Below, in pieces: positions 861 through 22,764 of a stretch of 64,000 nt of DNA. The notes under the pieces were generated by a model. That model had not been told where the DNA came from. It was given only the letters and a program-made list of their open reading frames with translations, and searched no databases. The translations under genes were made by a program, and so were the position numbers. Origin of the DNA: Ruditapes philippinarum (taxonomy: Eukaryota). The stretch's first letter is position 1. The number at the start of each line of letters is the position of its first letter. The stretch is taken from contig NW_026857023.1 in assembly GCF_026571515.1 (NCBI RefSeq), positions 1 through 64,000 on the forward strand, written 5' to 3'.

Positions 861-2262
861 AGAGCTATTGTAGTCGCCCCGGCGTCAGCGTCTGCGTCGG
901 CGTCTGCGTTGGTTAAAGTTTTTTGTAAAATCAAATATCTCAATTATTACTTGAGATATTCAATTGAAACTTACAATACTTATTTATAGTAACAAGGTAC
1001 ATCAGATTGACAAGTTGGATAACTCTGCCTACAATATTGACAGAATTATGCCCCTTTTTAACTTAGAAATTTTGGTTAAAGTTTTTTGTAAAGTCAAATA
1101 TCTCAATTACTACTTGAGATATTCAATTGAAACTTACAATACTTATTTATAGTAACAAGGTTGAACAGATTGACAAGTTGGATAACTCTGCCTACAATAT
1201 TGACAGAATTATGCCCCTTTTTAACTTAGAAATTTTGGTTAAAGTTTTTTGTAAAGTCAAATATCTCAATTATTGCTTGAGATATTCAATTGAAACTTAC
1301 AATACTTATTTATAGAAACAAGGTACATCAGATTGACAAGTTGGATAACTATGCCTACAATATTGACAGAATTATGCCCCTTTGGAACATAGAAATTTTG
1401 GTTAAAGTTTTTATGTAAAGTCAAATATCTCAATTATTGCTTTAGATATTCAATTGAAATTTAAAATACTTTTTTATAGTAACAATGTACATCAGTTTGC
1501 AAAATTGCATAACTCTGTGTGCAATATTTGCAGAATTATTTGCCCCTTTGAAAATTAGAAATTTTGGTTAAAGGTCTTCAAAGATATTTACTTGAAACTT
1601 TACACATGCACTTAGGGTCATAATTGGAGGGTCATAATTGTATGTCACTGACCAAGTTCCATAACTCTATCTTGCATTAAGGCTGATTCATATCCCCTAT
1701 TCTACTTAGTCTCTTGGTTAATGTTTGCATGCAAGTTTTACATATCTCAATAACTATTAAAGATATTTATTTAAAACTTCACATATGCATTTAGGGTCAT
1801 AATTGTAGGTCACTGACAAAGATCCATTCTATCTTGCATTTAGGCTGATTTTTCTCCCCTTTTTCAACTTAGAAATTCATGGTAAAGTTTTGCTTTTAAG
1901 CTGTTATCTCCATAACTACTGAAGGGTTTGTGCCTTTTTTGGGACAATTTATGCATTCATAATAATAAAGCAGTGATTTACTTGATAAAACATCTTAATA
2001 ACAAGCCTTTGTACCTTTTCTGTCATATTTATGTATTCATAGGTAATTAGTATTATTATACTCAATAAAACACCCTTGTCACATTACTCTTAGAATAGTC
2101 AAGCCAATACTGTATAATTAGACTCTCTCTAAGGCTTATAACATGAATTTATATAAAAAAATTAGCCCTTTTGTGAACTTAAAAAATTTAACATTATCAA
2201 GGCTGTTTTACTATCAAGCACTTAGAATAGTCGAGCGTGCTGTCCTACCGACAGCTCTTGTT
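861..2262 (+). mobile_element. Helentron-associated (HINE/DINE-like) element with 163-bp internal tandem repeats
   Basis: (GGCGTC)-type microsatellite; 163-bp period (ORFs 964 and 1127 near-identical); terminal hairpin GCTGTC..GACAGC then TCTTGTT. Confidence 0.8.
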
Positions 2263-2720
2263 TTTGTATAGATTTTCATCAAATGGTATAAAAATAAAAA
2301 AATGAAAATATTTCCAGTCCTGTGACGTCAAAAACTTCAGTGGGCTCCCCTAATTTTGGTCTATTTAAAGAAATTTGTAACAAATAGAAATATTTATATG
2401 GTATCGTGTTGATATATACAGATTCAATATATAATCTTAATACATTTGTGATGCAGTAAGCAGTAATATGAGAATCAAAGTTTTATTTAGAAAATAACTT
2501 GAAAACAAGCTTAATGATATACCACCAATACTTTTCTGCTTAAAATGTTTCTGTTATATGTTTAAAAGTTTAAAATGAATTCCATTACCCAGTTTCATTC
2601 TACCTATAATTATTATGTCTATATACATGTATAACTAGATGCAGCATACAATTGTACGGCTTTAAGACAATCAAATACTGTACTAATTTCAAGTGTTATT
2701 TGTGTTCTTTTTTTATATAT

Positions 2721-3057
2721 AGAGGATATTGAATGAGTGTAAGTTCAATACTGAATTTATTGCACAAGTTGAATAAAATTATATAATGCGAGCCTCTGGT
2801 GCGCATAATATTATTTTATTCAACAAGTTCAATAAATTCAGTAATGAACTTACACGAATTTGATATTCTATTTATCACATACCCAAAATAAAGACCGTTT
2901 TAAGTGAAAAAAGAGTCATTTTTCATTGACGCGTCTAAAGTATAACGTTAACATTTAGCTCGACTATGTTTGTGTAACGCAAATGACTTCACGTAAAAAT
3001 ATGTGCCTGTGCAATACATTTTTACAGAGTCGCAAAATCGACTTGGGTGGGTGATAA
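2721..3057 (+). mobile_element. Non-autonomous double-inverted-repeat element (Crypton-like), copy 1
   Basis: Starts AGAGGATATT; ~65-bp IR pair, then TTATCACA..TGATAA pair; absent at the matching site in copy A'. Confidence 0.7.
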
Positions 3058-3437
3058 GTATGAATATTTTATATGACTAATAACAATGGTGTTTTAGTAA
3101 GACTTTTAAATGTTATACTAGACAACATGTACATCATGTTACAGGCATTAAGTAATTATAACATTAATATTTTGGTATTTTTGTAACTACGCAATATGTA
3201 TTTGTAACTGATGAGATGTGGATTTAATGCTTAAAGCAAATTATATTTGTATATTTATTTGATTTAAAGAAAAAATATTGATTGTGCTTACTGAACAAAA
3301 TTCTTATATTATTTTTTTTTTTTCTTAAACTAAAATCTTAAAGCTATCTACAATACGGCATCAGGCCAGAATGTACTTTCTTGGAGAATGACCTAATTCT
3401 AATACTACTCAATCTATTGACTGTTTATTAAGTATCT

Positions 3438-3788
3438 AGAGGATATTGAATGAGTGTAAGTTCAATACTGAATTTATTGCACAAGTTGAATAAAATTATA
3501 TATTTTGCGAACCTCTGGTGCGCATTATATTATTTTATTCAATGAGTTCAATAAATTCAGTAATGAACTTACCTATTTTAATATTCTATTTATCACATAC
3601 ACAAAATAAACACCGTTTAAAGTGAAAAAAGAGTCATTTTTCATTGACCCGCCTATAGTATAATGCTAACATTTAGTGCATCTTTACACTATGTTTGTAT
3701 TACGCTAATGACGTCGCGTCAAAATATATGCACGGCTGTGCAATACCATATTTATGGAGTTGCTAAATCGGCATGGGCGTGTGATAAA
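3438..3788 (+). mobile_element. Same element, copy 2 (partial copy also at ~10290-10490)
   Basis: High similarity to 2721-3057. Confidence 0.7.
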
Positions 3789-4167
3789 ATTCAATTATAC
3801 TGAAAATTGTGATAATAACAATTGACATTTCCTAATTTTAAACATGGAATGTAGGATAAAAAATTGGGAAAAAAAATTTGTGTGTGTTTAAAAAGGTACA
3901 ATGCAAAAATTGTCTGTTTTATATCAATTATTAAAAGAAGATAATATAAACTGTTTACTGTTAGCACCATACTCAAATGTATCTTTAGAGGCCAATGTAG
4001 GTTTACTATTTGTCCCTCCTTCTTTTCTATGAAAACTGAATCTTCAACTGTAACTCAAATAGTAGAAAATCTAGGTTTATAATACTTGATAAATGGATTC
4101 TGTGACAAGCTCTTGTATATCATGCAAGCATTAAATGTCAATTTTAATAAGATTTAATTTTGTTTAA

Positions 4168-4506
4168 AGGTCCATTATGCCTCAGAAATGTTATTATTTT
4201 TATTTCACAAAAACTTTAAAATTTTGGTATCAATGTGACAGTTTCCAATAAATACTCATTTGCCATTTAAATGAACTTTCTTTGCTTCTTTTGTTTGTTA
4301 ATTATAGTGAATAAGTATTTTTTATGGAAGTCAAAATTCTACTTTGTTTACATTTTGCTACCTTTATGATACATAGCTACAGATTCAGAGCTACTGTCTG
4401 CAGATGTTTAACATGCTCTATATCCGTTATTAAAACATTTTTAAACACATTTTTGACATTTCTAAAAAATTTCATAAAATATGGATTTCTGAGGCATTAT
4501 GTGCCT
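4168..4506. mobile_element. Kolobok-like MITE
   Basis: TTAA flanks; TIR AGGTCCATTATGCCTCAGAAAT / ATTTCTGAGGCATTATGTGCCT; absent in copy A'. Confidence 0.78.
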
Positions 4507-4612
4507 TTAAAACTAAAATTTTATTAAAGTTTATCATATCTTTTATATATTATTCTAACATGACATTTTTATGATCCTCACTTATATAGATCTGAGAGTA
4601 TATTCTATTTTT

Positions 4613-4649
<37 letters not shown>

Positions 4650-6021
4650 ATTACTCTGTGAATAATTATAACATTGGTCATAACCAGTCCTTGTGCAAGG
4701 TGAAATTCCTCCTTGACAAAATTTGATCTTGTACATTAAGTCTAATCATAGTAATGGTCATTTGTTTTTCTTGAACAGTTGATTCAGAAAACATGGGATA
4801 GAAGTATGTCACTTGTGAAGGTATTAGCTGGTTAGATGGAATGATCAAAAATATGATCAAATCTGTGTAAAAACCAGCTTAACAAAGAAACAGAATAAAT
4901 ATAGTGCGTTCATTCTTTAAACAACAGCTTTCATATAATTATATAACAAAGAAAGAAACATTTTTTTTTACCTCTTAATGACCTTGTGACCTCTAATTAA
5001 GTGACCTTCTATGTTAAGAAAAGTTTATTGTTGTATTGTTTGTTATTCATTAAAAGCTTTGGGACTTGGCTAGTTATGTTTCATGATAACATTATATACA
5101 TGTTCTTTATTTCTTTTTTTGTGACCAAACAGCTTACTCAGGAACTGTGACCAACTTAATTTTATTTGTTTTTGCATATTTTATTATTATTATTATCCTA
5201 GTCTTTTTTTTTCATCAGTCTGTTAGTGATATATTGTTTATTCAGAATATTGATAATTCAGTATTGTCACATTGGACATTTTTTGTTATTTTTGTATGCA
5301 GAAATTGGAAAGAAATTTATTAAGTTTTAGAGCTGCTACCTCGTTCTTGTAGTAATTTACCACCAGCCTTGCTGTTTAACATATTTATATACCATTATGA
5401 AAAAGGATATGGACAAAGGTTTTATTATGACATTTAAAAAACAAATCTGATCCCTGGCTCAGACTTGCTATGTTGTGTAGTTATGAAATTATATTATCCT
5501 ATGTTGAATTTATCTATGCTGAACCACATATGATAAAATTTTGAGTGAATACAAAAAACCCAAAAACAACAAACTCATAACATGATTTAGCAGCTTAAAA
5601 TCGCAACAATTTTTTAAAAAGTAAAATGAATCTCTATTTTGTTCTTTAGGTGACAACAAAGTTCTTTGGTAATTATCACTGCTTGTGGATAATATATTTT
5701 TTATTGACCACTTGAAAAATTAATCTGGTCTCAGCTTTGGATATATTTATTATATATGTTGTATTAACTAACATGTAGTTTGTATCAAAGATGTAATATT
5801 TTAATAAAATTGGGACTGTTGCTATAAATTGTTTTTTTTTTGTATTATCTCACTAATTTCAACACATTGAAATTATGTAAAAAATAAAAGATATTTCTGT
5901 GGTTTTGAGTCTGCTCAATTAATGAATTCATGCAGTTCCATATTTTATGCTACCCTTACATAAAATAAAGGAAGCCATTGCAGTACAATGTAATGTAATG
6001 CCTTTGTCTGTAAATGATATT

Positions 6022-9000
6022 AGATAGATACTTTTTATTCCTCCAATATTGAAGAGCAAAACATATTTACAAAACGAACAATAACAAAGCATGGCATATG
6101 TACAATAAATTAAAAATCATAACATCTAAGCAAATATCATTTGTTATAATCGAATAAATATATGGAGATATGCTGATATCTGCATTTATCTCATAGGATG
6201 ACATAAAATGTATGTAACAGACTTCATTTATATAAAAACCACATCGTATTTGTATTTACTTTGCAAAAACTAGAAGTTGACTATCAAATTATAAAGTATA
6301 CAGGATACAAAAGATATATTTAATTGCTAAAGTTTAGTTTGAGAATTCATGTTTATTCATATCTTTCTTCGGTTACTTCTGTCAAAATTTTACTCGAAAC
6401 GAAATAGCAGAATGATGACTAAGTTATTAGAGTATTTAAAGGTACTCTAGGAATATAACCAACTGTAAATTGATGGTGTTTAAGAAAAGACGACATTCAA
6501 TGTTACAATACCTATCATACTGTTATATAATTACGATGAATTATTTCCAACCGAGGAAAAAAAACAAATTATAAAAACATAGATAGATAATGATAGTTTT
6601 TATGAGATCATATCAGTGTTTAAGACGTTATACATTAATGTCTCACAATAATGCAATTATATATACTTGAACAACTTGTATAGGCATTTTGCAATACTAT
6701 AATTGTGCAATATCTTCCCATCATTATCTGCAGCAAACTGAACAACGCGCCAGCACTGACTTTCTATTGTTGTTGTTGTAAGGGATAAGAATATATCCAT
6801 GCCTTTCGATTGAATTATTGCATCCCATAATTGTTTTCTCCTTGCAGAGTGTTTTGTACAAAAGCATATCACATGCGCCACAACACTATCGTTTAAAAGT
6901 TCACAGTTTTTACATAAAGAAATATAGTTTGGTGTCAAACAAGTACCAATTAAGTCTAACAAGAGGGAGCAAATATATTGTTGTTTCGGATTATGTCGGG
7001 CCACTTTCCACAGTTGCGATGGACTATCAGACAGAACAATCCGTTGGAGCTCTTGCCTTTTTGAGAGCAACCTTTCAAATCTATCATTTCTCTCTCTGTA
7101 AAACAGTTTTTATCAGTACCGATTTCCAAGACTGTTTAGAAGGAAATATACCACAATTCACAAAAGTTATCACTACTTCTTCAAGATTATACTTTTGAAG
7201 CAGGCTATAAATGTCAGGGATAAATCCAAATATTTGTTTATCAAAGAGTAGATATTTGGTCAGTCTGTTGATAAATACGTGTTTTACCAAATATCTGCAA
7301 GGTAAACGACACAGTTGTCCGAAAAATTGAAGCTTCCTGTAATTTATGATAGTTTCAATATCATTGAGGTTAATTGCATTCAGGGCTAAGTCTGTTGGAG
7401 TTCTTGGTTTGAGTCCCTGAATGAATTTCGCACAAAACCTATGAGAAATTTCCAGCTGTTGCATATCTGTAGACGAGTAACTATTCCAAAGTTCACAACC
7501 ATACAATGCACGAGGAATGACAACAGAGCAATAAATAGTTCTTGAGGTGATTGGGTTTAAAAGTTGAGGATTTATGCCATTATTATGAATGCTTAGCAAA
7601 GTGTCGCGAAGTTTGTTCCCTGCATCAAATATTGGTTTCTTTGTGTTGAGGGTTTTTCAGTCTCTATGCCTAAATGTTTATAACTTTTTGTTTCTTTGAT
7701 CACTTCATTTCCTAATTTGAACACACGATTATCTTTTGATTCTGTATCTCTTTCGTTATAAATAATTATTCCACACTTCATGACATTATAGTTATATCTC
7801 CATTGACGGGAATAATTGGAGCATATATCGAGCATTTTGTCCATACCACATTTCGACAATGACACTAGGACCATATCATCGGCTACAGCTGGGGTTGAAA
7901 CATTTAGGTCATATACACAAAAGCCATATCCACACTTCTCTAATTCCTTTATCAACCCATCAATGAAGAGGAGGTAAAATAATGGCGAACTTTTCCCTCC
8001 TTGTCTAGTTCCTTGTAATACGGAAAAACTGTCTGATTTGATACCTTGATACTTAACATAGCTAGTCACTCGTTTATACATTTCGACAATGGAGATTATT
8101 GTTGTATTGTCTACTTCACACTGCATCAGTTTGTAAAATAATCCCGAATGCCAGACATTGTCGAAGGCTTGACGTCCATCTAAATAGCACACGTACAACT
8201 TAGAAGAGTTTTCACGGGCAAACAATATGCTCTCGCGTAATAGAAATGACGTCATCAAGCAACCGAGTTTCTCTTGAAAACCACCTTGTTGAGAACTAAG
8301 TTTTTCCAGTAAAGTATTTTTACATCTTGATAACAATACAAGCTCGTACAATTTCAAAATTACTGATGATAATGTTATAGCACGATAGTTATTGGGATCA
8401 TCCTTCCTTTTATTTCCTCTATGTAAGGTTATAATCACGCCTTTTTTCATATCGTCTGGAATGTAGCCAATCCTAAGCATATGTGTGAAGATATTGGATA
8501 AAATTCTAGAAACAATGTCTTTTGAGTAAATTAAATGTTCGTACACTAAATTATCCTCACCACATGCTTTTCCTACTGGCAGGGTCTGTATAGCCTCAGA
8601 AACTGTATCTGGAAGCACACGTACTGTTTTATCGGTTGTGATACGCCCTAGTGTTTCATTTACCGTCGCTGTCACTGACTGCTTCCAATATTCATCATAT
8701 TCTTGGGATTCATTAAATGTATACAAAGATTGGAAATACAGTCCCCACTCTTTTGAAATTTATTCTCGGTCTCTTATTATTTTACCGTTGAAGTTTATAC
8801 CTTCAGTCATTTTACATGGACTCTTTCGTTTTCTGGAATTCACTAGTTTCCAAAATTGAGTTGAATCGATTTCTGCAGTTCTATCCAACTCGTTGTCCTG
8901 TTGAATAAGAAAATCCTCTGAGCATTTTCTCAGCATCTTGCGAAAGTCTCGTTTAGATGATTTATATTTAACGTAAAATACATTGTCGTTTCTACGTGGT

Positions 9001-9890
9001 CTCCCATCACGACACCATTCCTCGCGTAGCAATAGCATTTTCTTGTGTAAGGACGATAGTTCGTCATTCCAGAAGGGTTTTAAATATTCCTTAAAACGTT
9101 TCTGTGGTAACACTTGACACGCACTGTTCAATAAACTAGCGGAAATCACTGTGTATGCTCAATCAATACCATCTTTATCGAAGTCACAATATTCAAGTTC
9201 AATAAATTCATTGTCAGATAATAATAAAGACTGATATTGCACAATGCTATCATTAGATGCTTTCTTCCAATTAATATTATACACATTACTGCTTAAATTT
9301 GTTAGCATACTTGGTTCTACATATATATGAATAGACATGACAACAGGTCGGTGCCTCGATACATTTAGACTATTATCATCCATGATTTCACAATAAGACA
9401 CAAGATCAAGCACTTCATTAGGTAAACATATATAGTCAATAAGTGTTGAAAAACGATCATCATATGAAACATATGAACATGTGGCACCATAACATGTTGG
9501 TAACGTATTCACAGCTATCAAGTTACAATCTGTTAAAAACTTAAGCATATAACTGTGACGAGATGTTAAGCTATTCCATTGTGAATTATAGTCACCAATA
9601 AACATAGTCATACCATATTGTGAATACATGTAATACAAATCATATAGTTTATTAATGTAATTTACAAAGGAGTTCAGTGAATGATTAGTACATGGTAGGT
9701 ATATTTGAAATATATACATATACTGGTTCAACCCAACCTACAATTCTGTCATCGTCAATGTTTAATGGCGTTACAATATTATCAAAACGCTTATGCCATA
9801 AAAGGGCAACGCCACCATTACCTGATCGAGATCTGGATAATTTATTACTCTTATCACACACAGCATGGAAATTATAGTCTTTCTCAATAC
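6022..9890 (-). mobile_element. Non-LTR retrotransposon (APE+RT LINE, clade uncertain, possibly RTE-X-like), 5'-truncated and decayed
   Basis: APE motifs (GGVALLW, IGDYN, IDYI, SRHRPV); RT motifs (NYRAITL, QGGFQ, LDGRQAFD, QGGKSSP, ADD, YKHLG); C-terminal Cys/His motif; 3' end GGAGGAATAAAAAG-(TATC)n. Confidence 0.92.
6657..9890 (-). pseudogene. LINE ORF2 broken by stops (9159, 8760) and frameshifts (~7650, ~7080)
   Basis: ORF pieces 9159-9731, 8760-9149 and 7593-8726 share a frame; 7084-7599 and 6657-7070 are shifted. Confidence 0.9.
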
Positions 9891-10656
9891 GTTTGTGATG
9901 CAGTAAGCAGTATTTTATATGAGAATCAAAGATTTATTTAGAAAATAACTTGAAAACAAACTTAATGATAGATCACCAATACTTTTCTGCTTAAAATGTT
10001 TCTGTTATATTCTAAGAAAAGTTTAAAAAGAATTCTATTACACAGTTTCATTCTGCCTATATTATGTCTATATACATATATAACTATATGCAGCATATGT
10101 CTTAAAGACAATCAAATACAATAATATTCAAGTGTTATTTGTGTTCTTTTTTTATATGTATGAATATTTTATATGACTAATAACAATCATGTTTAAGTAG
10201 GACTTTTAAACGTTATACTAGACAACATGTACATCATGTTACAGCTAGGCATTAAGTCATTATAACATTAATATTTTGATATTTTTGTGCAAAATAAATA
10301 CCGTTTAAAGTGAAAAAAGAGTCAGAAAAAAAGAGTCATTTTTCATTGACGCGCCTATAGTTTAACGCTTACATTTAGGGCATCTTTACACTATGTTTGT
10401 ATAACGCTAATGACGTCACGTCAAAATATATGCACAGCTGTGCAATACCATATTTATGGAGTCGCAAAATCAGCACGGGCGTGTGATAAAATTCAATTAT
10501 ACTGAAAAGTGTGATGATAACAATTGACATTTCCTAATTTTAAACATGGAATGTAGGATAAAAAATTAAAAGAATTTTTTTTTTGTGTTTAAAAAAAGGT
10601 ACTATGCAAAAATTGTCTGTTTTATACGGTAATATCAATTATTAAAAGAAGATAAT

Positions 10657-10878
10657 TGTTTCATATTTAATTCTACATTAAATATATATTGTTTCATATT
10701 TAATTCTACATTAAATATATATTGCATGCAGTACCTTTAAACTTGATTGTTAGGCTCCGCCTACTTAGTGTACTGACCAATTATATAACTACATATTGTT
10801 AAACAGTCTTAGAAATAAACTCATAGTATCAACATCTCGTATTCTCTGCATCCACACCAAAATAACACACATAAAACA
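10657..10878 (+). repeat. 5' LTR (222 bp)
   Basis: Two substitutions relative to 3' LTR; internal 33-bp tandem duplication; AATAAA. Confidence 0.96.
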
Positions 10879-10889
10879 TGGTGTCAGAA
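10879..10889 (+). promoter_or_regulatory. Primer binding site TGGTGTCAGAA (tRNA-Leu)
   Basis: Directly follows 5' LTR; complementary to tRNA-Leu 3' end TTCTGACACCA. Confidence 0.85.
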
Positions 10890-10966
10890 TAAAAGGATTT
10901 AATTATTTATAATAATTAAAATAACAGGAATTAAACGTATTCTGGATTTATAACCATTGTAAAAAG

Positions 10967-11545
10967 ATGGATTCAGCAACAAATCCAAGAATTGACTGGG
11001 AAGCCAGAGACTTGCCAACTGCATTTAAGAAGTTTAAAGAACATTGTGACTTTATGTTTGGAGGGCCACTAGAGAAGAAAACAGAGGAGGCAAAATGCAA
11101 TTACTTAATGTTATGGGTTGGTGAGAAGGGTCGCCAAATATTTTCAACCTGGACAGTTACAGCTGAAGAAAGAAAACTGCTTCAGACATATTATCAAGGT
11201 TTCGAGACATATTGCGCACCCAAAGTGAATCACATTTACTCAAGGTATAAATTTAAATCGTGTATACAATCTGAAGGACAGACCTTTGAAGAGTTCGTCA
11301 CAGATTTGAAATTACTAATAAAGGACTGTGGCTACGCAGAAGAGATACAAAGCGAGATGATACGTGATCACATTGTATTTGGTGTACGTTCCCACCAGAT
11401 AAGAGAGAAACTCATAAATGAAGGATCAAACTTGACACTTGAAAAATGTATTGACTTGTCTCGCACTTATGCATTAAGTCAGACACAGCTAAGGGATATA
11501 AGCAGTCAAGAAATCCTCAGCAGCAACAGCAGCAGCACCATTTAA
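10967..11545 (+). CDS. gag: Gag N-terminal/capsid part, cut off by frameshift
   Basis: MHR-like QSEGQTFEEFVTDL and MIRDHIVFG; zinc knuckles lie in the +1 frame, which is open from 11502. Confidence 0.85.
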   Translation: MDSATNPRIDWEARDLPTAFKKFKEHCDFMFGGPLEKKTEEAKCNYLMLWVGEKGRQIFSTWTVTAEERKLLQTYYQGFETYCAPKVNHIYSRYKFKSCIQSEGQTFEEFVTDLKLLIKDCGYAEEIQSEMIRDHIVFGVRSHQIREKLINEGSNLTLEKCIDLSRTYALSQTQLRDISSQEILSSNSSSTI

Positions 11546-14500
11546 GCAGTTTCGGACGCAAATCAGGAAGACAGATGGCAGCAAACACAGCACTAGATAC
11601 AATCAACGAGTACCTACTGGAAATACAAATAACTGTAATAACTGTGGGACTTACCATTTAAAACGTGATACATGCCCAGCCAAGGGTCAAAAGTGTTTGT
11701 ACTGTACAAAGTTTAATCATTTCGCAAAAGTGTGTAGGAAAAGAAAACAGGATTTAGGAAGCAAAAATGTTAATGAGGTAACACATTTTAACACAAATGA
11801 TCTTGATTGTCCCCTACCCAGTCATGATAATGACATGTATGTCTATACAGTTGAGCATGACAGCACAACAAATCAAGCATTTGCTAAGGTCAAAGTCTGC
11901 TCAACAGAACTTAATATGAAAATTGATACAGGAGCTCAGGTCAATGTTCTCCCAAGGTCAATATTCAGATCATTAGGCAAATTAGGTCCTGTACTTCCAA
12001 CACAAAAGCAATTAACCGTATACAATGGTCAGCCTCTCAAAGTTGATGGCTGTATCAATCTTCCTTGTACATATAAAGGTCAAATCTCTACAGAAGAGTT
12101 TTACATAGTAGATACACATTCAAGCCCCATTCTAGGTCTTCAAACATGCCTTAAATTAAACTTAATTAAGTTAGTTTTGTCAAATACGTGCACAGTGCCT
12201 ATCACAAAGGAGCAAGTGCTCAGTACTTACTCAGATGTTTTCAACGGAATAGGAAAATTTCCAGGGGAATTTGAAATACAGTTGCGTGACAATGTCACAC
12301 CAGTAGTTCACCCTCCACGCAGAGTTCATATTGCCATTCGTGACAAACTTAAAATAGAGCTTGACAGAATGGAAAGCTTAGGTATTATTACGAAAGTCAC
12401 AGAACCTACAGACTGGGTAAATAGTCTAGTTGTAGTAGAAAAACCTAATGGCTCTTTACGGTTATGCTTAGATCCGAAAGATCTAAACAATGCCATCAAA
12501 AGACCTCATTACCCTAATAGGACTATCGACGACATATTGCCCGACTTGTCAAATGCTACTGTGTTTTCAAAATTAGATGCATGTAGTGGTTATTGGTCTA
12601 TCCAACTAACAGAAAAGTCATCTTACTTGACAACTTTTAACAGTTGTTTTGCAAGATACAGATTCCTAAGACTCCCATATGGCCTAAAGAATGCAAATGA
12701 TGCATTTTGTGCAAAAATGGAACAGTGTCTGGAAAATTTGCCAGGAGTAAGAACAATTGTTGACGACATTGTTGTTTACGGCAAAGATAGGGCAGAACAT
12801 GACCAAAATCTGGACAGACTCTTGAGAAGATGCCAATTAATAGGTATCAAGCTCAATCCCGACAAAACAGAAATAGGGAAAACAGAGTTACCTTTCTTTG
12901 GCCACTTAATTACTGATCAAGGTTTAAAAATAGATCCTGCAAAGGTCAAGGCCATAGCAGAGATGCCATCTCCTACTTCTAAACAGGAATTGCAAACAGT
13001 GCTAGGCATGGTCACATACTTACAGAGATTTGCACCCAAACTCTCAGAAATAACTGCACCCATGAGACAGCTTCTATCTAAAGATGTAGATTTTAGCTGG
13101 GATGCACCCCAAGAAAATGCCCTACAACAGGTTAAAAGCATTATTACACAAAGCCCTGGTCCAATACTCTCTTACTTTGACCCAAATAAGGAAATTACTT
13201 TTCAAGTCGACTCGTCCAAGTATGGTTTATCTGCAGTACTCATGCAGGAGGGTAAACCAGTTGGTTTTGCATCAAAGTCACTTACCCCTACTGAGGTCAA
13301 TTATGCCCAAATTGCAAAGGAATTGTAAGCTATCCTTTTCGGATGTAAAAAATTCCACCAGTACATTTACGGTAAACGTATGACATGTCAAAGTGATCAT
13401 AAACCTCTCCAAGCTATATGGAAAAAAGGCTTGAACTCAGCACCTCCACGACTGCAGCGCATATTACTGCATTTGCAGCCGTATGATATTGATGTAGTTT
13501 TCATCCCCGGGAAAGATATACCCCTAGCAGATTGTTTGTCTCGGAAATTCTTACCAGACACATGCCCAGAAATAGCCGAATCGGCTAATCTAGAAACACA
13601 TGTACACACAATAATGTCGAACTTACCAGTGAGTGACCAAAAAATGGAACAAATTAGGTTAACAACCAAATCTGACCTACAAATGAAAATTCTTTCATCA
13701 GTTATTCATGAAGGATGGCCTAATAATAGAACAGATTGCCCTCAAAGTATTCTGGAATTCTGGAATTTCAGAGATGAACTATCAGTTATAGATGGTGTCA
13801 TCTTAAATAATACTAAAATTCTAGTTCCAGCAGAGCTCAGATCACTCATGCTTGACATTATTCATGATGCACACTTAGGTGTAGAAAAATGCTTAAATAG
13901 AACTCGAAACGTGCTCTTTTGGCCAAACATGGCCACAGACATAAAGAAAAAAGTCCTGGAATGCCCTATATGTATAGAGCATAGGTGTTCAAACCCAAAG
14001 GAACCCCTGAGACCAAATAAAATACCTGATAGGCCATGGCAAATTTGTGCTACAGATCTCTTTCATTGGAATAATTCAGATTATGTGTTATTAGTTGATG
14101 CTTACAGCAAGTACTTTGAAGTTAGTCAAATCTCAAGTACAAAATCTAGTACAGTCATTAACAAATTGAAAAGCTTCTTTAGCAGGCATGGAATACCTGA
14201 AGTATTGTTCTCAGATAATGGCCCCTGTTACAGTGCAGAAAGTTTCTTACAGTTCACAAAACTGTATGATTTTTCTCATGTTACATCATCCCCAGGTCAT
14301 TCATCAGGCAATGGTTTGGCAGAAATCACTGTCAAAACTGTCAAAAATCTGTTTACAAAATCAAAACAAGCAGGAAAAGATCCTTATCTTGCGATGCTGG
14401 AATATCGCAATGCCCCTTTACCCTGTGGAAAATCTCCAGCACAGCTGCTTATGAGCAGACAGTTAAGGTCGACATTGCCATTAATGTCAGAGCAACTTGA

Positions 14501-15047
14501 TCCCAAAGTTCCTGACACACAGGTTATCAGAGACAGCATGTTTAATGCTAAACAAAGGTCAAAATATTATAATGACAGGTCAACTAAAACCCTCAAACCT
14601 CTAGAAATTGGAGAAGGTGTTAGAATTAGGCAAGGAAAAAGTTGGTTACCTGCAGAAGTTATGCATAAAGTTCATGACAGATCTTATGATGTAAGAACAA
14701 AAGATGGTGCAATATATAGACGAAATAGATACCATCTACTAAAATCAAATGAACAACCATTTTCTGAAACTGAGAACAGTTCAAATAATTCATTACACGA
14801 ACCACCTTTAGAAATTAAATCTTATAACACAAAAGTTCATAACCCTAGTACATATGACCCTGCCAATAAAATATTGACACCAGGTCAAGACGCTAATTCT
14901 CAAAAATCCCCTGTTGTCTTACAGTCCCAGACACCAAAACAAACTTCGCCTGTCAAACATCAATCACCCCTGTCTGAGAATGCAGACAATGAATATAAAA
15001 CAAGATCAGGTCGTTGTGTTAAAAAACCTCATAAACTTACCATGTAG
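11502..15047 (+). pseudogene. pol: NC-protease-RT-RNaseH-integrase; in-frame TAA at 13326-13328
   Basis: CNNC..H..C and CLYC..H..C knuckles, KIDTGA, IVDD, VDSS; YAQIAKEL*AI nonsense codon; HHCC and DDE integrase motifs. Confidence 0.92.
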
Positions 15048-15441
15048 AAATTTGTTACTTATACATGTTATTTTAACAATGTTATATTGCCTCTTAAAAT
15101 GAAATATGTGTTTATGTATAGTTTTGCATACAAATATCTCTACAGTACAAAGAAACAATATTATCATTCTTGAGATCAGTGTGAATTTATAGTGACTATT
15201 AGTGTAATGATACACCATGGAACTAGCGTGAATTCAGATATCAATTAAATGGACATTCTACCTCACAGATAAGCCATAAATAATTTGCTGACATTTTACA
15301 ACATCTGTGGAGGAATAGAACTGAGAACATTATCATGGCAATAAAACAGACATTTACATCTATCAGATACAAGTGATATCAACATTATTTGCCTTGAGAT
15401 TCTTTAGAAATTTCTTGTTGTTGTTTTTAAAAGAAGGGAGA

Positions 15442-15663
15442 TGTTTCATATTTAATTCTACATTAAATATATATTGTTTCATATTTAATTCTACATTAAA
15501 TATATATTGCATGCAGTAACTTTAAACTTGATTGTTAGGCTCCGCCTACTTAGTGTACTGACCAATTATATAACTACATATTGTTAAACAGTCTTAGAAA
15601 TAAACTCATAGTATCAACATCTCGTATTCTCTGCATCCACACCAAATTAACACACATAAAACA
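15442..15663 (+). repeat. 3' LTR (222 bp)
   Basis: Preceded by polypurine tract AAAAGAAGGGAGA (15429-15441). Confidence 0.96.
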
Positions 15664-17763
15664 ATAATTTTACTGTTTACTGTAAGTACCGTACTTGTCT
15701 CACTAGAGGGCACTATAGGTTTACTAAATTTGTCTTTCCTTCTATTCTATGAAAACTGAATCTTCAACTATAACTCAAATAGTAAAAAATCTAGGTTCAT
15801 AATACTTGGTATGTGGATTCTGTGACAAGCCCTTGTCTATCATGCAAGCATTAAATGTCTATTTTAATAAGATTTAATTTTGTTTAATAATTTAAACTTC
15901 ATAATTAACACAAAAAATGAACTTAAAACTAAAATTTTATTAAAGTTTATCTTATCTTTTATATATTATTCCAACATGACATTTTTATGATCCTCACTTA
16001 TATAGATCTGAGAGTATATTCTATTTTTTCTGTCTGTCTGTCTGTCTATTACTCTGTGAATAATTATAACATTGGTCATACCAGGGTCGCTGGTTCGATC
16101 CTGGTGCAAGGTGAAATTCCTCCTTGACAAAATTTGATCTTGTACATTAAGTCTAATCATAGTAATGGTCTTTTGTTTTTCACAGTTGATTCAGAAAACA
16201 TGGGATATAAGTATATCTCTTGTGGAGGTATTGATAATTACTAGTTAGTTAGAGCATTGTCAGGTATATTGGGACATCTAATGCATATTTGTTACTATGA
16301 TTTTAAATATGCTTGTTTCAGTATTGGTGTTGAATATTGAGGATATCCAAGAAAGCTGGTTAAATGGAATGACTTCTGGGATCAAAAATGTGATAAAATC
16401 AGTGTTAAAAGCAGGTAAATAAAGAAACAGAATTATTATTGTGCGTTCATTCTTTAAACAACAGCTTTCATATATATAACAAAGAAAGAAACATTTTTTT
16501 TTACCTCTTAATGACCTTGTGACCTTCTATGTTAAGAAAAGTTTATTGTTGTATTGTTTGTTATTCATTAAAAGCTTTGGGACTGGGCTAGTTATGTTTC
16601 ATGATAACATTATATACATGTTCTTTATTTCTTTTTTGTGACCAAACAGCTTACTCAGGAACTGTGACCAACTTAATTTTATTTGTTTTTGCATATTTTA
16701 TTATTATTATCCTAGTCTTTTTTTTCATCAGTCTGTTAGTGATATATTGTTTATTCAGAATATTGATAATTCAGTATTGTCACATTGGACATTTTTTGTT
16801 ATTTTTGTATGCAGAAATTGGAAAGAAATTTATTAAGTTTTAGAGCTGCTACCTCGTTCTTGTAGTAATTTACCACCAGCCTTGCTGTTTAACATATTTA
16901 TATACCATTATGAAAAAGGATATGGACAAAGGTTTTATTATGACATTTAAAAAACAAATTTGATCCCTGGCTCAGACTTGCTATGTTGTGTAGTTATGAA
17001 ATTATATTATCCTATGTTGAATTTATCTATGCTGAACCACATATGATAAAATTTTGAGTGAATAAAAAAAACCCCAAAAACAACAAACTCATAACATGAT
17101 TAAGCAGCTTAAAATCGTAACAATTTTTTTTAAAGTAAAATGAATCTCTATTTTGTTCTTTAGGTGACAACAAAGTTCTTTGGTAATTATCACTGCTTGT
17201 GGATAATATATTTTTATTGACCACTTGAAAAATTAATCTGGTCTCAGCTTTGGATATATTTATTATATATGTTGTATTAACTAACATGTAGTTTGTATCA
17301 AGGATGTAATATTTTAATAAAATTGGGACTGTTACTATATATTGTTTTTTTTGTATTATCTCACTAATTTCAACACATTGAACTTATATAAAAAATAAAA
17401 GATATTTCTGTGGTTTTGAGTCTGTTCAATTAATGAATTCATGCAGTTCCATATTTTATGCTACCCTTACATAAAATAAAGGAAGCCATTGCAGTACAAT
17501 GTGATAAATGCCTTTGTCTGTAAATGATATTGCCACAGATAAAATTCAGAAATAAAAAATTAGACTGCATTTGTTTAAAGCTCTGTTATTGCATTGTATA
17601 ATACTAATAAAAGCTAAGTGACAAAGCAGTTTTGCTTGTTCATACGAGTACATATTACCTGATCATGGTCAATTTCAAATAAAAGACAAAGTTAATATTC
17701 CAGCATGTGAAACAAAATACATTTTATTATCACATGTATTCCAAATATATAGTTCATTGCATA

Positions 17764-20128
17764 AACAACAAAGACAGCGAAGCTCGACTAATAAAATACT
17801 GGAAGACAAAACTATGAAAAAAAAATCAATTATGAATAATTATGTATTAAGTTATAGTAAAAAATAACATTTTTAACAAAAATTCCAAGATCAAGGGGAA
17901 TAATTCTGGAAAAAGTCACGCTAGAGTTATGAACCTTGTCACACAACATGTGTGTAATGATAAGAAATATATATTTGAAGTTAAAAAAGTAAAGAAGTTA
18001 CAATATTTCTTAAAGAAAATCCTAAGTTCAAAGAGAGATAAATCTGTAAATATTGCTTCAAGAGTTATGAACCTCGTCACATAAAATGTAATTGATGAAA
18101 AAAGAATAAGTATTTGAAGTTTGAGGTAGATAATAATCTTTAAAACTAAAAAAGTTGTATTATATTAAAAAATAACATTTTTCAAGTAAAAAAAAATAAG
18201 TTTATGGGGAGATATATCTTGCAATATTGGTGCTAGAGTTATGAACCTTGTCACATAACATGTGGTTAATGATAATATATATATTAGAAGTATGAAGTTT
18301 ATCCTTTAAGAAATAAATAAGTACCAGTAAAAAAAATAATATTTTTTAAGGAAAATTCTAAGTTCAAGGGGAGATAAATCTGAAAATATTGGTGCTAGAG
18401 TTATGAACTTTGTCAGATAAGATGTGGTTGATGAGAAGGAACATATATTTGAAGTATGAAGTTTATTCATTAAGAAATAAAGAAGTAACAGTAAACAAGA
18501 GGGCCATGATGGCCCTGGGGTCGCTCACCTGTACATAGGCCCCCAGGGCGGGGCCAGTTTAAACCAAAGGGCTTTTATTTGAACAAACTTGGAAGACACC
18601 CATTAGAAGATGTTTCATGATGTTAAGTGTTTACTATATAAATACACAAATAATGAAAAACAATGACTTTTGCCCCTCCCCCCTCTCCCTGGCAGGGCCA
18701 ATTTTAACCCAAGGGCTTTTATTTGAACAAACTTGGTAGACACCCATTAGAACATGTTTCATGCTAAATATCTTAGCTCTAGCTCTTTGGGTTCTTTAAA
18801 AGAAGATTTTTAAGTTTTTAATAACTATATGCAATATAGGGAAAATCAATGACCCCCTAAGGCGGGGCCATTTTTGACCCAAGGGCTTTTATTTGAACAA
18901 ACTTGGTAAACATCCATAAGTACATGTTTCATGCTAAATATCTTAGCTCTAGCTCTTTGGGTTCTTTAATAGAAGATTTTTAAGTTTTTACTCTATGTAT
19001 ATAGGGAAAATCAATGACCCCTGGGGCGGGGCCAATTTTGACCCCAGGGCTTTTATTTGAACAAATTTGGTAGACAGCCATTAGAAGATGTGTCAAGCTA
19101 AATATCCTAGCTCTAGCTCTTTGGGTTCTTTAAAAGAAGATTTTTAAGTTTTTACTACATGTATATAGGGAAAATCAATGACCCCTGGGGCTGGGCCAAT
19201 TTTGACCCCAGGGCTCTTATTTGAACAAACTTGGTAGACACTCATTAGAAGATGTTTCATGCTAAATATCTTAGCTCTAGCTCTTTGGGTTCTTTAAAAG
19301 AAGATTTTTTTAAGTTTTTACTATATGCATATAGGGAAAATCAATGACCCCCTGGGGCGGGGCCAATTTTGACCCCAGGGCTTTTATTTGAACAAACTTG
19401 GTAGACACTGATTAGAAGATGTTTCATGCTTAATATCTTAGCTCTAGCTCTTGGGTTCTTTAAGAGAAAATTTTTTAAGTTTTTTACTATATGCATATAG
19501 GGAAAATCAATGACCCCCTGGGGCGGGGCCAATTTTGACCCCAGGGCTTTTATTTGAACAAACTTGGTAGACACTCACTAGAAGATGTTTCATGCCAAAT
19601 ATCTAAGCTCTAGCTCTTTGGGTTTTTTAGAAGAAGATGTTTAAAGTTTTTTCTTTTGGTTGCCATGGCAACCAGAGTTCTGCATGGAATGGAATTCTTG
19701 GAACAACTTTGTTAAGGCTTCACACAAGGAACATCCCTGTGATGTTTCATTATGATCTGCCTCATGGTTTCAGAGGAGATGTCGTTTGAAAAGTGTGAAC
19801 GGACGACGTACGACGGACGACAGACGACGGACGAAGAGTGATCCTAATAGCTCACCCTGAGCATATGCTCAGGTGAGCTAAAAATAGTATTTTTTTAAGG
19901 AAAATTCTAAGTTCAAGGGGAGATAAATCTGAAAATATTGGTGCAAGTGTTTTGAACCTTGTCACATAAGATGTGGATGATGATAAGGAACATATATTTG
20001 AAGTTGATATCTTAAGAAATGACAAAGTTATAGTGAAAATATTTTACTGCACCAAAACTTTAATCTGAAATCTGGACGCCGGGGCGAGTAGGACAGCTCT
20101 CCATATACTTCGTATAGTCAAGCTAAAA
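17764..20128 (-). mobile_element. HINE-like element with ~140-175-bp tandem repeats, hosting a nested element
   Basis: Sub-terminal IR GCTCGACTA / TAGTCAAGCT; AGAGTTATGAACC units; terminal hairpin. Confidence 0.75.
18494..19882 (-). mobile_element. Nested HINE-like element with ~165-bp tandem repeats
   Basis: AACAAGAGGGCCATGATGGCCCT..GCTCACCTG start; (GACG)n microsatellite; TAGCTCACC..GGTGAGCTA palindrome; inserted in an A-run of the host repeat. Confidence 0.82.
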
Positions 20129-21403
20129 AGATAAAAATCAAAACTTGATGATGCCCCCTCGGAAAGTTTTGAAAATAATGAATTATGACTAGGTCAAATA
20201 ATTACAAATTTTTACTAAGTCAAGCGCAAAAACTCTACAAATACCAAAAATACTATAAAATCCACAAGCAAACCACCAGGTGAATAACTACACATGCTTT
20301 ATATGTTTAAGGATATTGGCAGTAAGTTATAACAAAATTTTTATTGTTTTAAATGAGCTTATGAATTTGTCAAAATTGTGGCTTCAGTCTTGAATGGTCT
20401 AAAGACAGCAACAGGCCTGTTCACTCAAGGAGCAATTCTTCCAAATCTGGATGAATTCAGACTTAAATTTGGTTTTAGGAAAAATTTTGAAGTTCACTAA
20501 AGAATCTGTAAAACTAACATGCAAATAAACACCAAGAAAACAGACTAAGAATGGAATGTGATAATTGTGTCAAGAATGAATGAGGATATAATTATTATTC
20601 AATATGCACCGTCACTAAAATCGTGGTATAAACTAAAATGGCTAGGGTGATGTCCATATCACAGTGCCTGGCTTTTATCAGGCATTTTAACATCAGACTA
20701 TCTCATAGAAAGGGGCTTTTCCAAGGGTTAGAAGATCATGGTTAATGTCCCGTTATGCTCCTAGAATTGTGGGGTGCTGGTTACAATCGCTTAGTCCATT
20801 AAACTTACATGTATTTCTTTTAGGAGAAAATATAATGTAAACCTAGACCAATATGGCCTTGGATCTTTTACCAAAGTTTTTCAGATCAAAATGTAAAGAA
20901 AACATGTTTGAAGGCCACTTTTGTGTTAAAGGAAATATGCAAAGAAAAGTCAGATTGAGACACACTTGAGAACCCAAACTCAAACTATTTGTCCTTTTTA
21001 TTTTGATGAGCTAGTGTCTTCATTCTATGTTAGCCTACACTAATCTTTAAACTGTATAAAAAACATTATAACAAGGTTATTACAGCTGATCTTAAGAACT
21101 TTAATGTTAACAAGACTTAGTCTTTCTTTGTTTTGTGACACACTTTTCTTCCCTTGACCAGTATGATACAAGAAACGTCATATCGACCTTTTTCAAAATC
21201 CTCAAGGACATGTATCTAACAACATAATTATCTCCACTTAAAATATTGACCACCTAGTGCCTCTTCCCCTTTAACATTCCTTTTGCAGCAACACAATTAT
21301 CTTCACTAACAACATTAAGATTCTTGTACCCTTTAACACATTCCTTTAGCAACAATACAATCATCTTCCCTTACCTATATACTGTTTATGAATTAAACAA
21401 ATA

Positions 21404-22764
21404 CGAGGGGTGTCCCAGAATTACGTGGACTTTTGCTGTTACTTAAAAACTACTGAAAATAAAAACAAACAAAATTAACATGAACAAAATGCAACTTTAT
21501 TGCATTAGTACAAAAAATGTCAAAGTTGTCCGGCAACTGGATCAGTGTATGTGGGCAGGGTAATGCGACAAGGGGTAGCGGGTGCGGGGCAGTCCATTCC
21601 GACGTTACGTCATTCCGGTGGTGTCGCTAGTTGTTAATAAATGCGTGGCATCGAATGTCAGTTTTTCTCAACATAGTCGCCGCCAAACTCAATACACCTA
21701 TGGTGCGATATATCAACTGGTCGTACACCGCCCTGTATAATAATAATAATAATAAAGCATACTATTAACTTTTGTTACGATAATAGTGTTAAAGTTGACG
21801 GTGATAATGCTGACGCCGTATTATTATTATTACTATTTATCATTATTATTTTTATTATCATTATTTTTATAATAATTATTATTATTATTATTATTATTAT
21901 TATTGTGGAGTTTATTTTGTACGCAAAGACAATGTGCATTAACAAGGGAAATAACCTATCATGCGCACTGCTTACTATAGCAGTTTGAGTTCACTTTCTT
22001 AAAAGCTGAAGCGGATAAATTGCGTTTAAAATAATAAATTGTGATTAGCTTAATTTTTAAAATCATTTTTTTAAACACAAAATTATTGCTTACCCTTGAA
22101 TAGTACTCAGCATTGACCTTGGTGTAACGCCTGTCCCGATCTATGACGTCCTTGACTTCCTTAATTGACGCCTCAGTCAACGTTGACTTGCTCCCACGAC
22201 CCTTGTCGTCTTCAATGTCCTCTCGGCCGTCTCGAAAACGCTTATGCCACTTGAAAACGAGTGATCGACAAAAAGGAGGTCTCACTTTTGCAGTCTCCAA
22301 CATTTCCTGCGTCTGTGTTGGCGTCTTCCCAAGATTAACACAAAACTTGATGATATTCCGATGGTCCGCGTAATCCGTGGACGTCATTTTTTGTTAAATA
22401 TCCAAGAGCAACGGTTCTCAGTTGTCCGCTGGTAAACAATAACAGAAACAGCTATGACGTCAAAATTTCAAACGAACGTTCATATGACGTCACTGCATAT
22501 GTTTACGACGTCGCGCCAATCGTAAATCGCAAGATATACGAAAGTAAAGACAACTTATTAATACAAAATATTGGACTGTCCCGCCCTGTGCATACTGCGT
22601 TACTATAGCGACGTAAAATATAGAGAAGCAATGTTAGAAATTTAAAAATAATGGACATATTCATTAAGGATATGTTAAAGGTATTGTGTACAAATTTGCT
22701 AAAAAATGCATTAAAAAATAAAAAAGTTATAGCAAAAGTCCACGTTATTCTGGGACACCCCTCG
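21404..22764 (-). mobile_element. Mariner (Tc1/mariner) element, internally deleted
   Basis: ~34-bp TIRs CGAGGGGTGTCCCAGAAT.ACGTGGACTTTTGCT; TA TSD; HTH N-terminus (ORF from 22387) fused to KVNAEYY; C-terminal RCIEFGGDYVEK* remnant near 21660-21700. Confidence 0.93.

What the first reader, a model, noticed from the sequence alone, without database searches (positions are those of the whole stretch)
2439..17531. LINE flanked by a ~3 kb direct duplication: giant target-site duplication or LINE-bridged unequal exchange
Seen: the LINE 3' tail starts at 6022, exactly where copy A ends (..TAAATGATATT). Its truncated 5' end joins the start of copy A' through microhomology (tct.aatac at 9882-9890 vs 2435-2443). 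Copy A' continues into unique DNA after 17531. Known: target-primed reverse transcription normally gives TSDs of only a few to ~20 bp; kilobase duplications are rare. Inference: the insertion itself duplicated ~2.6-3.6 kb, either by a distant second nick or by joining to the homologous chromosome. That would make LINEs a source of segmental duplication in this genome.
Basis: partly seen in the sequence, partly recalled or inferred. Interest (0 to 1): 0.78.

Follow-up and report, generated by a model that had tools for sequence, protein, structure and literature searches.

The report
LINE wedged between two older duplicate segments
A truncated LINE retrotransposon sits exactly between two direct copies of a 3.6-kb segment, but most of that duplication is several times older than the LINE, so the LINE probably landed between older duplicates and did not create them.

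Summary
The structure is real. Copy A (2435-6021) and copy A' (9882-17531, carrying a later 5-kb Gypsy element) flank a minus-strand, 5'-truncated LINE (6022-9890). Its (ATCT)n tail abuts A's last base. Its 5' end joins A' through AATAC microhomology. A-derived sequence occurs only twice in the genome. A haplotig differs from A by about 0.4%, and contigs of run X1 bridge both joints, so it is not an assembly artefact.

Dating contradicts a one-step giant target-site duplication. The LINE is about 1% diverged since insertion. A and A' differ by 8.4% over 2435-4984 but only 1.5% over 4985-6021, where the mismatches are clustered.

Best reading (about 0.5): an older tandem duplication; a later LINE insertion that removed the joint between the units; and patchy gene conversion of the right-hand 1 kb. 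A LINE-bridged exchange between already diverged templates stays possible (about 0.15).

None of 19 other copies of this LINE has a kb-scale flanking repeat. Interest is modest: LINE-linked duplications and deletions of 1-10 kb are already described for human L1.

The parts
2435..6021 (+). Copy A of the direct duplication (3,587 bp). The left flank runs into it without any mark, also in haplotig C13534.
2435..4984 (+). A_L: the old part of the duplication. It shows 8.4% substitutions against A' (121/1447), plus large indels at 2719-3057, 3185-3600 and 4174-4466 that are present in A only.
4985..6021 (+). A_R: the young-looking part, 1.5% against A' (15/1013). The split is 2/546 up to 5550 and 13/467 beyond, and the mismatches are clustered. 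Read as gene-converted tracts.
6022..9890 (-). 5'-truncated LINE (APE-type non-LTR retrotransposon). It holds the 3' 3.87 kb of a roughly 6.27-kb family, and its reading frame is broken into at least 5 pieces.
6022..6029 (-). LINE 3' tail, (ATCT)2 on the LINE strand, directly abutting the last base of A.
7593..8726 (-). Reverse transcriptase domain of the LINE (RVT_1, E = 4e-23).
9882..9890 (.). Microhomology at the LINE 5' joint. AATAC (8/9 over TCTNAATAC) is shared by the LINE family sequence and the left flank/A start at 2435-2443.
9882..10656 (+). Copy A', left piece, homologous to A 2435-3945 minus the A-only indels.
10657..15663 (+). Young Ty3/Gypsy LTR retrotransposon inserted in A' after the split. 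LTRs lie at 10657-10878 and 15442-15663 with 2 mismatches. The 5-bp target duplication ATAAT lies at 10652-10656 and 15664-15668. ORFs run gag, PR-RT-RNaseH, integrase.
15669..17531 (+). Copy A', right piece. It ends at the same base as A and then runs into unique DNA.

Best explanation
The two copies come from an older local (tandem) duplication whose unit was longer than the 3.6 kb now seen.

Much later, a LINE of a still-young family was reverse-transcribed from a nick just after the base that is now 6021 in the first unit. Its incomplete cDNA (3.87 of 6.27 kb) was then joined through AATAC microhomology to a resected end at the start of what is now A' in the second unit. The DNA between the two points, including the joint between the units, was lost. 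This is a LINE insertion-mediated deletion.

Any such event between two tandem units leaves 'repeat - LINE - repeat' and so mimics a giant target-site duplication.

The right-hand 1 kb of the two copies was homogenised by one or more patchy gene conversions, possibly during repair of the LINE-induced break. A Gypsy element later entered A'.

- **Shown:** the structure, both joints, the LINE's identity and truncation, the ages, the sharp switch in divergence, and the two-copy status.
- **Inferred:** the lost intervening DNA, the order of conversion and insertion, and the nick position.
For: **The LINE is young.** It has 32/3805 private substitutions, an ML terminal branch of 0.011 and 0.2-1.5% per 400-bp bin. 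Its four nearest copies differ from it by 1.9-2.4%.

**A_L versus A'_L is much older.** They differ by 121/1447 = 8.4% (8.5% without the high-copy repeat), against 24-32 mismatches expected at the LINE's age (P < 1e-33).
- The spectrum is 58 transitions to 63 transversions, so there is no sign of deaminase-type hypermutation.
- Five large indels, including transposable-element material, separate the left parts, and none larger than 15 bp separates the right parts.
- Allelic divergence at the same place is only 3/862, 4/816 and 2/171. The left part is therefore not a fast-mutating stretch, and A' is an outgroup to both alleles of A (86.1% and 86.5% identity in BLAST).

**The divergence pattern looks like gene conversion.** It switches sharply near 4985 (12/146 before it, then 1 mismatch in about 430 sites after). 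A_R mismatches are clustered (CV 1.54, P about 0.01), and 2/546 versus 13/467 differ at P = 0.003. This is the mosaic expected from gene conversion.

**The joints fit a LINE-mediated deletion.**
- There is no short target duplication at the LINE ends, and the 5' joint uses microhomology. This is the pattern described for L1-mediated deletions (PMC7058536, passages).
- Deletions of 1-10 kb are reported as more frequent than 1-10 kb duplications at L1 insertions (bioRxiv 10.1101/2024.12.14.628481, passages).

**Local duplications arise here without LINE ends.** kb-scale local duplications unrelated to LINE ends exist in this genome (C2056: 97.9% over 2,519 bp, about 8.6 kb apart).
Against: - The lost DNA and the pre-insertion allele are not observed, and nothing in the flanks can show them. 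Left and right flanks share no homology, which both models expect.
- The part of A nearest the LINE (5551-6021, 2.8%) matches the age expected from the LINE (about 2.2%). A true LINE-made duplication predicts this, but under this reading it needs coincidence or a repair link.
- The geometry is exactly that of a giant TSD, and only these two copies of A exist.
- Two or three other copies of this LINE may carry longish flank repeats of 13 to about 135 bp. Long duplications may therefore be in this genome's LINE repertoire.
- In runs X10 and X14 a contig fits up to exactly 6021 and then runs on into 110 and 270 letters that do not fit the LINE. No X14 contig on the A' start was listed. This could be the A'-to-right-flank path or an allele without the LINE. 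The letters were not shown.
Confidence: 0.5

Rival explanations
1. LINE-bridged exchange between already diverged templates. Reverse transcription started at the end of A on one chromosome. The cDNA end was captured at the start of A on the homologue, or a sister-chromatid event was followed by allelic recombination. The left 2.5 kb therefore reflects old allelic divergence, and the right 1 kb reflects time since the event.
For: - The geometry and both joints fit.
- A exists only twice in the genome.
- A_R as a whole (15/1013) and its LINE-proximal part (13/467 = 2.8%) match twice the LINE's age of 1.7-2.2%.
- Tandem duplications bridged by an L1 insertion are documented in human cells and tumours.
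Against: - It needs about 6% allelic divergence over 2.5 kb at the time of the event. The two haplotypes sampled here differ by about 0.4% in the same stretch, and A' is an outgroup to both.
- It also needs a later conversion or an assembly-polishing effect to explain 2/546 in 4985-5550.
- The clustering of mismatches in A_R is not expected.
Confidence: 0.15
2. Simple giant target-site duplication on one chromatid or between sister chromatids (distant second nick). A and A' were identical when the LINE inserted.
For: - The geometry is identical to a TSD, with the LINE tail exactly at the end of A and microhomology at the 5' joint.
- Duplications of 1-10 kb at L1 insertions are regarded as 'large TSDs'.
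Against: - Uniform divergence of about 2% is predicted. Observed values are 8.4% over 1,447 sites (P < 1e-33), 0.4% over 546 and 2.8% over 467.
- There are five large indels in the left part.
- The LINE is uniformly young, so it is not an old copy partly overwritten.
- There is no transition excess that would point to editing of one copy.
Confidence: 0.04
3. An older, perfect tandem duplication A-A' into whose exact joint the LINE later inserted without loss of DNA (pure coincidence of position).
For: - The ages are as in the best explanation.
- This LINE family usually leaves no detectable TSD (16 of 19 copies), so a blunt insertion is plausible.
Against: It requires the nick to fall on one particular base out of several thousand. 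The deletion version reaches the same structure from a broad range of breakpoints.
Confidence: 0.08
4. Assembly artefact: a false duplication made by joining two haplotypes, with the LINE at the seam.
For: The right-hand 1 kb is 98.5% identical, and 4985-5550 is nearly identical. Cross-polishing in the assembly could exaggerate this.
Against: - The left parts differ by 8.4% and by kb-scale indels, whereas a real haplotig (C13534) differs from A by about 0.4%.
- There are no N runs in the window.
- Contigs of run X1 bridge both joints, and contigs of X5 reach 29 and 30 letters across them.
Confidence: 0.03

Closest known systems
L1 insertion-mediated target-site deletions (human cell culture and tumours)
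   Same: - A truncated element with its 3' tail at the primary joint.
- No short TSD.
- The 5' joint is formed when the cDNA pairs with a distant resected end; 1-10 kb is reported as the commonest size class (passages of PMC7058536, and of bioRxiv 10.1101/2024.12.14.628481).
   Different: - The lost DNA is only inferred here.
- The event lies between two units of an older duplication, so it mimics a duplication.
- It is a germline, evolutionarily retained event in a mollusc.
- The LINE is a different family, with an (ATCT)n tail instead of poly(A).
L1-bridged tandem duplications / 'large TSDs' (1-10 kb, up to Mb)
   Same: Direct repeat - LINE - direct repeat, with the tail at one joint and a truncated 5' end at the other. 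The proposed causes are capture of the cDNA by a break on the sister chromatid, or break-induced replication.
   Different: Copies made that way must be as old as the LINE. Here 70% of the repeat is about 4-5 times older.
Interlocus (non-allelic) gene conversion between tandem segmental duplicates
   Same: - A sharp switch from high to very low divergence inside one colinear alignment.
- Residual mismatches in clusters.
   Different: - The tract runs up to the LINE joint and is about as old as the LINE, which hints at a link with repair of the insertion break. This link was not tested.
- GC bias was not tested.
False duplications (uncollapsed haplotypes) in long-read assemblies
   Same: Two similar copies lie close together in one contig.
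   Different: Divergence is 20 times the allelic level, and the joints are present in contigs of an independent read set.

Membership tests
APE-type LINE (non-LTR retrotransposon) copy made by target-primed reverse transcription | Reverse transcriptase coding region | tested here: met
   RVT_1 at E = 4.3e-23 on window 7593-8726, minus strand.
APE-type LINE (non-LTR retrotransposon) copy made by target-primed reverse transcription | Apurinic-type endonuclease in the family's ORF2 | tested here: met
   Exo_endo_phos at E = 2e-6 (28.2 bits, cut-off 24.5) in the full-length copy C9678. The window copy is truncated inside this domain, and its own piece gave no Pfam hit.
APE-type LINE (non-LTR retrotransposon) copy made by target-primed reverse transcription | Common 3' terminus with a simple-repeat tail; variable 5' truncation among copies | tested here: met
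   All 26 of 26 3' ends stop at the same point with ATCT-type repeats. Copy lengths range from 281 to about 6,270 bp.
APE-type LINE (non-LTR retrotransposon) copy made by target-primed reverse transcription | Short target-site duplication at the two ends | tested here: not met
   There is none at the window copy other than the kb-scale repeat. None was detectable in 16 of 19 other copies either, so this seems usual for the family.
LINE-generated large TSD / tandem duplication | The repeat abuts both ends of the element, in direct orientation, with the target otherwise single-copy | tested here: met
LINE-generated large TSD / tandem duplication | The two repeat copies are as old as the insertion (divergence about twice the element's own) | tested here: not met
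   Divergence is 8.4% over 2435-4984 against an expected 1.7-2.2%. Only 4985-6021 fits, at 1.5%.
LINE-generated large TSD / tandem duplication | An empty allele with one copy and no element | tested here: inconclusive
   Contigs of X10 and X14 leave the stretch at exactly 6021 into letters unlike the LINE. This may simply be the A'-to-flank path, because the letters were not listed.
LINE-generated large TSD / tandem duplication | Endonuclease target motif at the 3' joint | not tested
   The family's cleavage preference is unknown. The flanks after the tail show no obvious consensus by eye.
LINE insertion-mediated deletion | No TSD, a truncated element and microhomology at the 5' joint | tested here: met
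LINE insertion-mediated deletion | A pre-insertion allele carrying the DNA that was lost | not testable with these tools
   There is no second haplotig over the joints. No outgroup genome was available, and the one read-laying run was used.
Gene conversion between paralogues | An abrupt change of divergence within a colinear alignment, with a mosaic of identical and divergent patches | tested here: met
   A_L versus A_R gives Fisher P = 3e-15. 2/546 versus 13/467 gives P = 0.003. Clustering gives P about 0.01.
Assembly false duplication | The copies differ only at the allelic level, and the joints lack read support | tested here: not met
   Divergence is 8.4% against about 0.4% allelic. X1 contigs bridge both joints.

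The most novel reading that the evidence does not exclude
A germline LINE insertion in a mollusc really did bridge two chromosomes. Its cDNA started at the end of A on one homologue and was captured at the start of A on a strongly diverged homologue. This made a heritable 3.6-kb tandem duplication, the evolutionary counterpart of the L1-bridged duplications so far seen in human tumours and cell clones. A weaker version holds that repair of the LINE-induced break converted the adjacent 1 kb from the paralogue.
Probability: 0.15. Interest if true: 0.6.

Novelty: new member of a known kind. Interest (0 to 1): 0.3.

Why it matters
A true giant TSD would be a rare germline example of a LINE creating a segmental duplication outside mammals. 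The analysis shows that geometry alone is not enough. A LINE that deletes the joint between two older tandem units leaves the same 'repeat - LINE - repeat' picture. Comparing the age of the element with the age of the flanking repeats separates the two cases, and that check applies to any similar finding in this scan. The locus itself is most likely the product of ordinary, known processes.

Tried and rejected
- **Haplotig artefact: rejected**.
- **NAHR between flanking LINEs: rejected.** There is no LINE left of A or right of A'.
- **3' or 5' transduction of A by the LINE: rejected.** No other locus holds A next to a LINE, and the tail lies between the LINE and A, not after A.
- **DNA-level template switch (MMBIR) into a genomic LINE copy: unlikely.** The insert starts exactly at the family's RNA 3' end with its tail.
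- **A giant TSD limited to the young 1 kb: geometrically impossible.** The LINE 5' end abuts the start of the old part.
- **Deaminase-type hypermutation of one copy: rejected.** The spectrum is 58 transitions to 63 transversions.
- **An old LINE overwritten by a young one: rejected.** Divergence is uniform along the element.
- **Related satellites in the two flanks as a cause of unequal exchange: rejected.** The arrays at 909-1573 and 18002-19651 share a period of about 163 bp but not their sequence.
- **LINE clade: not determined.** Pfam gave only RVT_1 and Exo_endo_phos, and the protein atlas gave only generic reverse-transcriptase clusters.
- **C14814 flank repeat as an insertion into a tandem array: not shown**.
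- **Read depth: not used.** The tool states that contig depth cannot rank parts.
- **Dating the A-only element insertions: no clean answer**.
- **Supplementary files of the two papers: not opened.** Their tables of L1-linked duplications might hold closer parallels.
- **Rows dropped before the TSD survey.** These are copies whose 5' or 3' end lay outside the loci held, or that were nested or divergent: C12889, C1510, C8572, C13383/C4936, C12235, C13185, C14708, C8735 and C9362. The second C2056 copy was counted once.


Full report
**Structure.** The window is contig C5510:1-64000 of a 1.4-Gb, AT-rich genome. Earlier notes of this scan call it a clam/mollusc; I did not test that.
- A self-comparison finds one colinear direct repeat: A = 2435-6021 and A' = 9882-17531.
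- A' is interrupted at 10657-15663 by a Ty3/Gypsy element. Its 222-bp LTRs differ at 2 positions and it is flanked by the 5-bp repeat ATAAT. A holds the uninterrupted site.
- With that element removed, A (3,587 bp) aligns to A' (about 2,640 bp). Large A-only blocks lie at 2719-3057, 3185-3600 and 4174-4466, and an A'-only block lies at 16233-16353.
- At least two of the A-only blocks overlap very high-copy short repeats.

**The element between the copies.** Positions 6022-9890 are a LINE on the minus strand.
- It has an RVT_1 domain. A full-length relative, C9678:88293-94563 (about 6.27 kb), also has an Exo_endo_phos endonuclease domain and a 452-aa ORF1 without a Pfam match.
- All 26 of 26 genomic 3' ends examined stop at the same ...AAAAAGT followed by ATCT-type repeats, and then enter flanks that are unrelated between loci, apart from two sets of loci that share a flank. 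In the window the tail is (ATCT)2, and the next base is the last base of A.
- At the other end, 8 of 8 rows (7 distinct copies) continue past ...CAATAC into more LINE sequence, whereas the window continues with A'. AATAC (8 of 9 over nine bases) is shared with the left flank/A boundary at 2435-2443.
- The copy is cut inside the endonuclease domain, about 2.4 kb from the family's 5' end.

**Not an artefact.**
- The right kilobase of A occurs only twice in the genome (3 of 3 candidates scored).
- The start of A' matches only A and a 5.6-kb haplotig, C13534 (35 of 35 candidates scored).
- The 240 bases after 17531 matched only themselves among the 40 of 2,564 candidates scored.
- C13534 covers the left flank and A up to 3299. 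It differs from the window by 3/862, 4/816 and 2/171 substitutions, whereas it is only 86.1% identical to A'.
- In Logan contigs of four public runs laid on 4900-10800, X1 has one contig across the A/LINE joint (403 and 39 letters) and one across the LINE/A' joint (540 and 464 letters).
- X5 has contigs reaching 29 and 30 letters across the two joints, just under the tool's 31-letter rule.
- In X10 and X14 a contig fits up to exactly 6021 and then runs on for 110 and 270 letters unlike the LINE. No X14 contig on the start of A' was among those listed. These may be the A'-to-flank path or a LINE-free allele. The letters were not shown, and the tool warns that holes and contig depth prove nothing.

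**Dating.** If the insertion made the duplication, A and A' were identical at that moment. They should now differ by about twice the LINE's own divergence, evenly along their length.
- The LINE has 32 private substitutions in 3,805 sites (0.84%) and an ML terminal branch of 0.011. It differs by 1.9-2.4% from its four nearest copies, and each 400-bp bin shows 0.2-1.5%.

| Segment of A | Mismatches vs A' | Divergence |
|---|---|---|
| 2435-4984 (A_L) | 121/1447 | 8.4% (JC 8.9%) |
| A_L without the high-copy repeat | 107/1258 | 8.5% |
| 4985-6021 (A_R) | 15/1013 | 1.5% |
| 4985-5550 | 2/546 | 0.4% |
| 5551-6021 | 13/467 | 2.8% |

- Left versus right gives Fisher P = 3e-15. The expectation for the left part at the LINE's age is 24-32 mismatches (P < 1e-33).
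- The two sub-parts of A_R differ at P = 0.003, and the 15 mismatches are clustered (CV 1.54, P about 0.01).
- The mismatch spectrum on the left is unbiased (58 transitions, 63 transversions). Allelic divergence in the same stretch is about 0.4%, so neither editing nor a local mutation hotspot explains the excess.

**Reading.** A one-step giant TSD on one chromatid or between sisters is contradicted.
- Any LINE insertion that removes the joint between two units of an older tandem duplication leaves 'left flank - unit 1 up to p1 - LINE - unit 2 from p2 - right flank'. This has the same geometry as a giant TSD.
- The absent short TSD, the truncation and the microhomology joint are the features described for L1-mediated deletions. 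There the cDNA pairs with a distant resected end (PMC7058536, passages).
- Deletions of 1-10 kb are reported as more frequent than the 1-10 kb tandem duplications that the same authors regard as large TSDs (bioRxiv 10.1101/2024.12.14.628481, passages). I saw the older papers cited there only in the reference list.
- The sharp switch of divergence near 4985 and the patchy mismatches to its right are what gene conversion between tandem paralogues produces.
- I put this combined reading at about 0.5.
- Its weak points are that the lost DNA is unobservable here, and that the young tract next to the LINE (2.8%) has just the age expected from the LINE (about 2.2%). The second point needs coincidence or a link between break repair and conversion.

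**Rivals.**
It needs alleles 15-20 times more diverged than those sampled, plus a further conversion (about 0.15).
- Insertion at the exact joint of a perfect tandem duplication is about 0.08.
- A simple giant TSD is about 0.04.
- An assembly artefact is about 0.03.

**Is it general?** I examined 19 other copies whose two ends lay in loci I held. Flanks were mostly 1.5 kb, so repeats up to roughly 1.5-3 kb were detectable.
- 16 of 19 show no flank repeat.
- 3 of 19 show candidates: about 50 bp (C9678, set 65 bp away from the 5' end), about 62-135 bp at about 78-80% identity (C14814), and 13-22 bp (C6838).
- 0 of 19 show a kb-scale repeat.
- A separate 8.6-kb-spaced duplication (C2056, 97.9% over 2,519 bp) holds a LINE fragment inside its unit. 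This shows that local duplications arise here without LINE ends at their borders.

**Limits.**
- There was one read-laying run, and it returned contigs only.
- No outgroup genome was available.
- Own-genome searches score only the best 40 candidates where repeats are abundant.
- The LINE's clade was not determined.

Noticed in passing
window 10657-15663: A young Ty3/Gypsy LTR retrotransposon. Its 222-bp LTRs have 2 mismatches, its target repeat is ATAAT, and a purine-rich tract lies before the 3' LTR. Long gag, PR-RT-RNaseH and integrase ORFs are separated by a few breaks. Described only.
   Followed up: partly
window 3437-3789 (also 2715-3057; A' 10289-10480): A very high-copy repeat of about 351 bp with a palindromic part (10,931 first-look candidates, copies about 90-92% alike). 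It also occurs as three head-to-tail units at G000:C2247:388739-389791.
   Followed up: no
window 4164-4511: A high-copy element of about 350 bp (5,409 first-look candidates, 76-83% alike), present in A and absent at the matching place of A'.
   Followed up: no
window 2100-2265: A short element of about 165 bp with dozens of copies at 96-98% identity (1,861 first-look candidates). The haplotig C13534 aligns with the window only from 2262 on, so the element or its surroundings may differ between haplotypes.
   Followed up: no
window 909-1573, 18002-18495, 18691-19651: Three tandem arrays with the same period of about 162-164 bp but unrelated sequences lie on both sides of the duplication.
   Followed up: partly
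G000:C2056:29978-33363 and 38595-41980 (L022, L025): A local duplication about 8.6 kb apart (97.9% over 2,519 bp). It contains the same 391-bp LINE 3' fragment with identical flanks, so the LINE fragment was copied as a passenger.
   Followed up: partly
G000:C9678:88293-94563 (L065, L036, L010): A near full-length LINE copy. A repeat of about 50 bp (48/52) follows its tail directly, but upstream it lies 65 bp before the 5' end. The 4 mismatches are more than the element's own 0.8% branch predicts.
   Followed up: partly
window 9891-10218, run X14: No contig of run X14 was listed on the start of A', while X1, X5 and X10 have one. This could be a hole in the data, a diverged allele, or an allele lacking A'.
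   Followed up: no
window 4986-5000 and 5343-5405: The 15-bp block that A has and A' lacks is also missing from the only contig laid there in X1 and X10. At 5396 and 5405, three of the four runs carry a letter different from both assembly copies. The two assembly copies are thus closer to each other here than to other individuals, which points to recent conversion or cross-polishing.
   Followed up: no
window 21400-21444 and 22724-22768: A 45-bp inverted repeat pair (93% complementary), 1.3 kb apart. It may mark the terminal inverted repeats of a DNA transposon.
   Followed up: no
window 17772-17982: A high-copy repeat of about 210 bp (2,564 first-look candidates, about 90-92% alike) begins 240 bp after the end of A'.
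   Followed up: no
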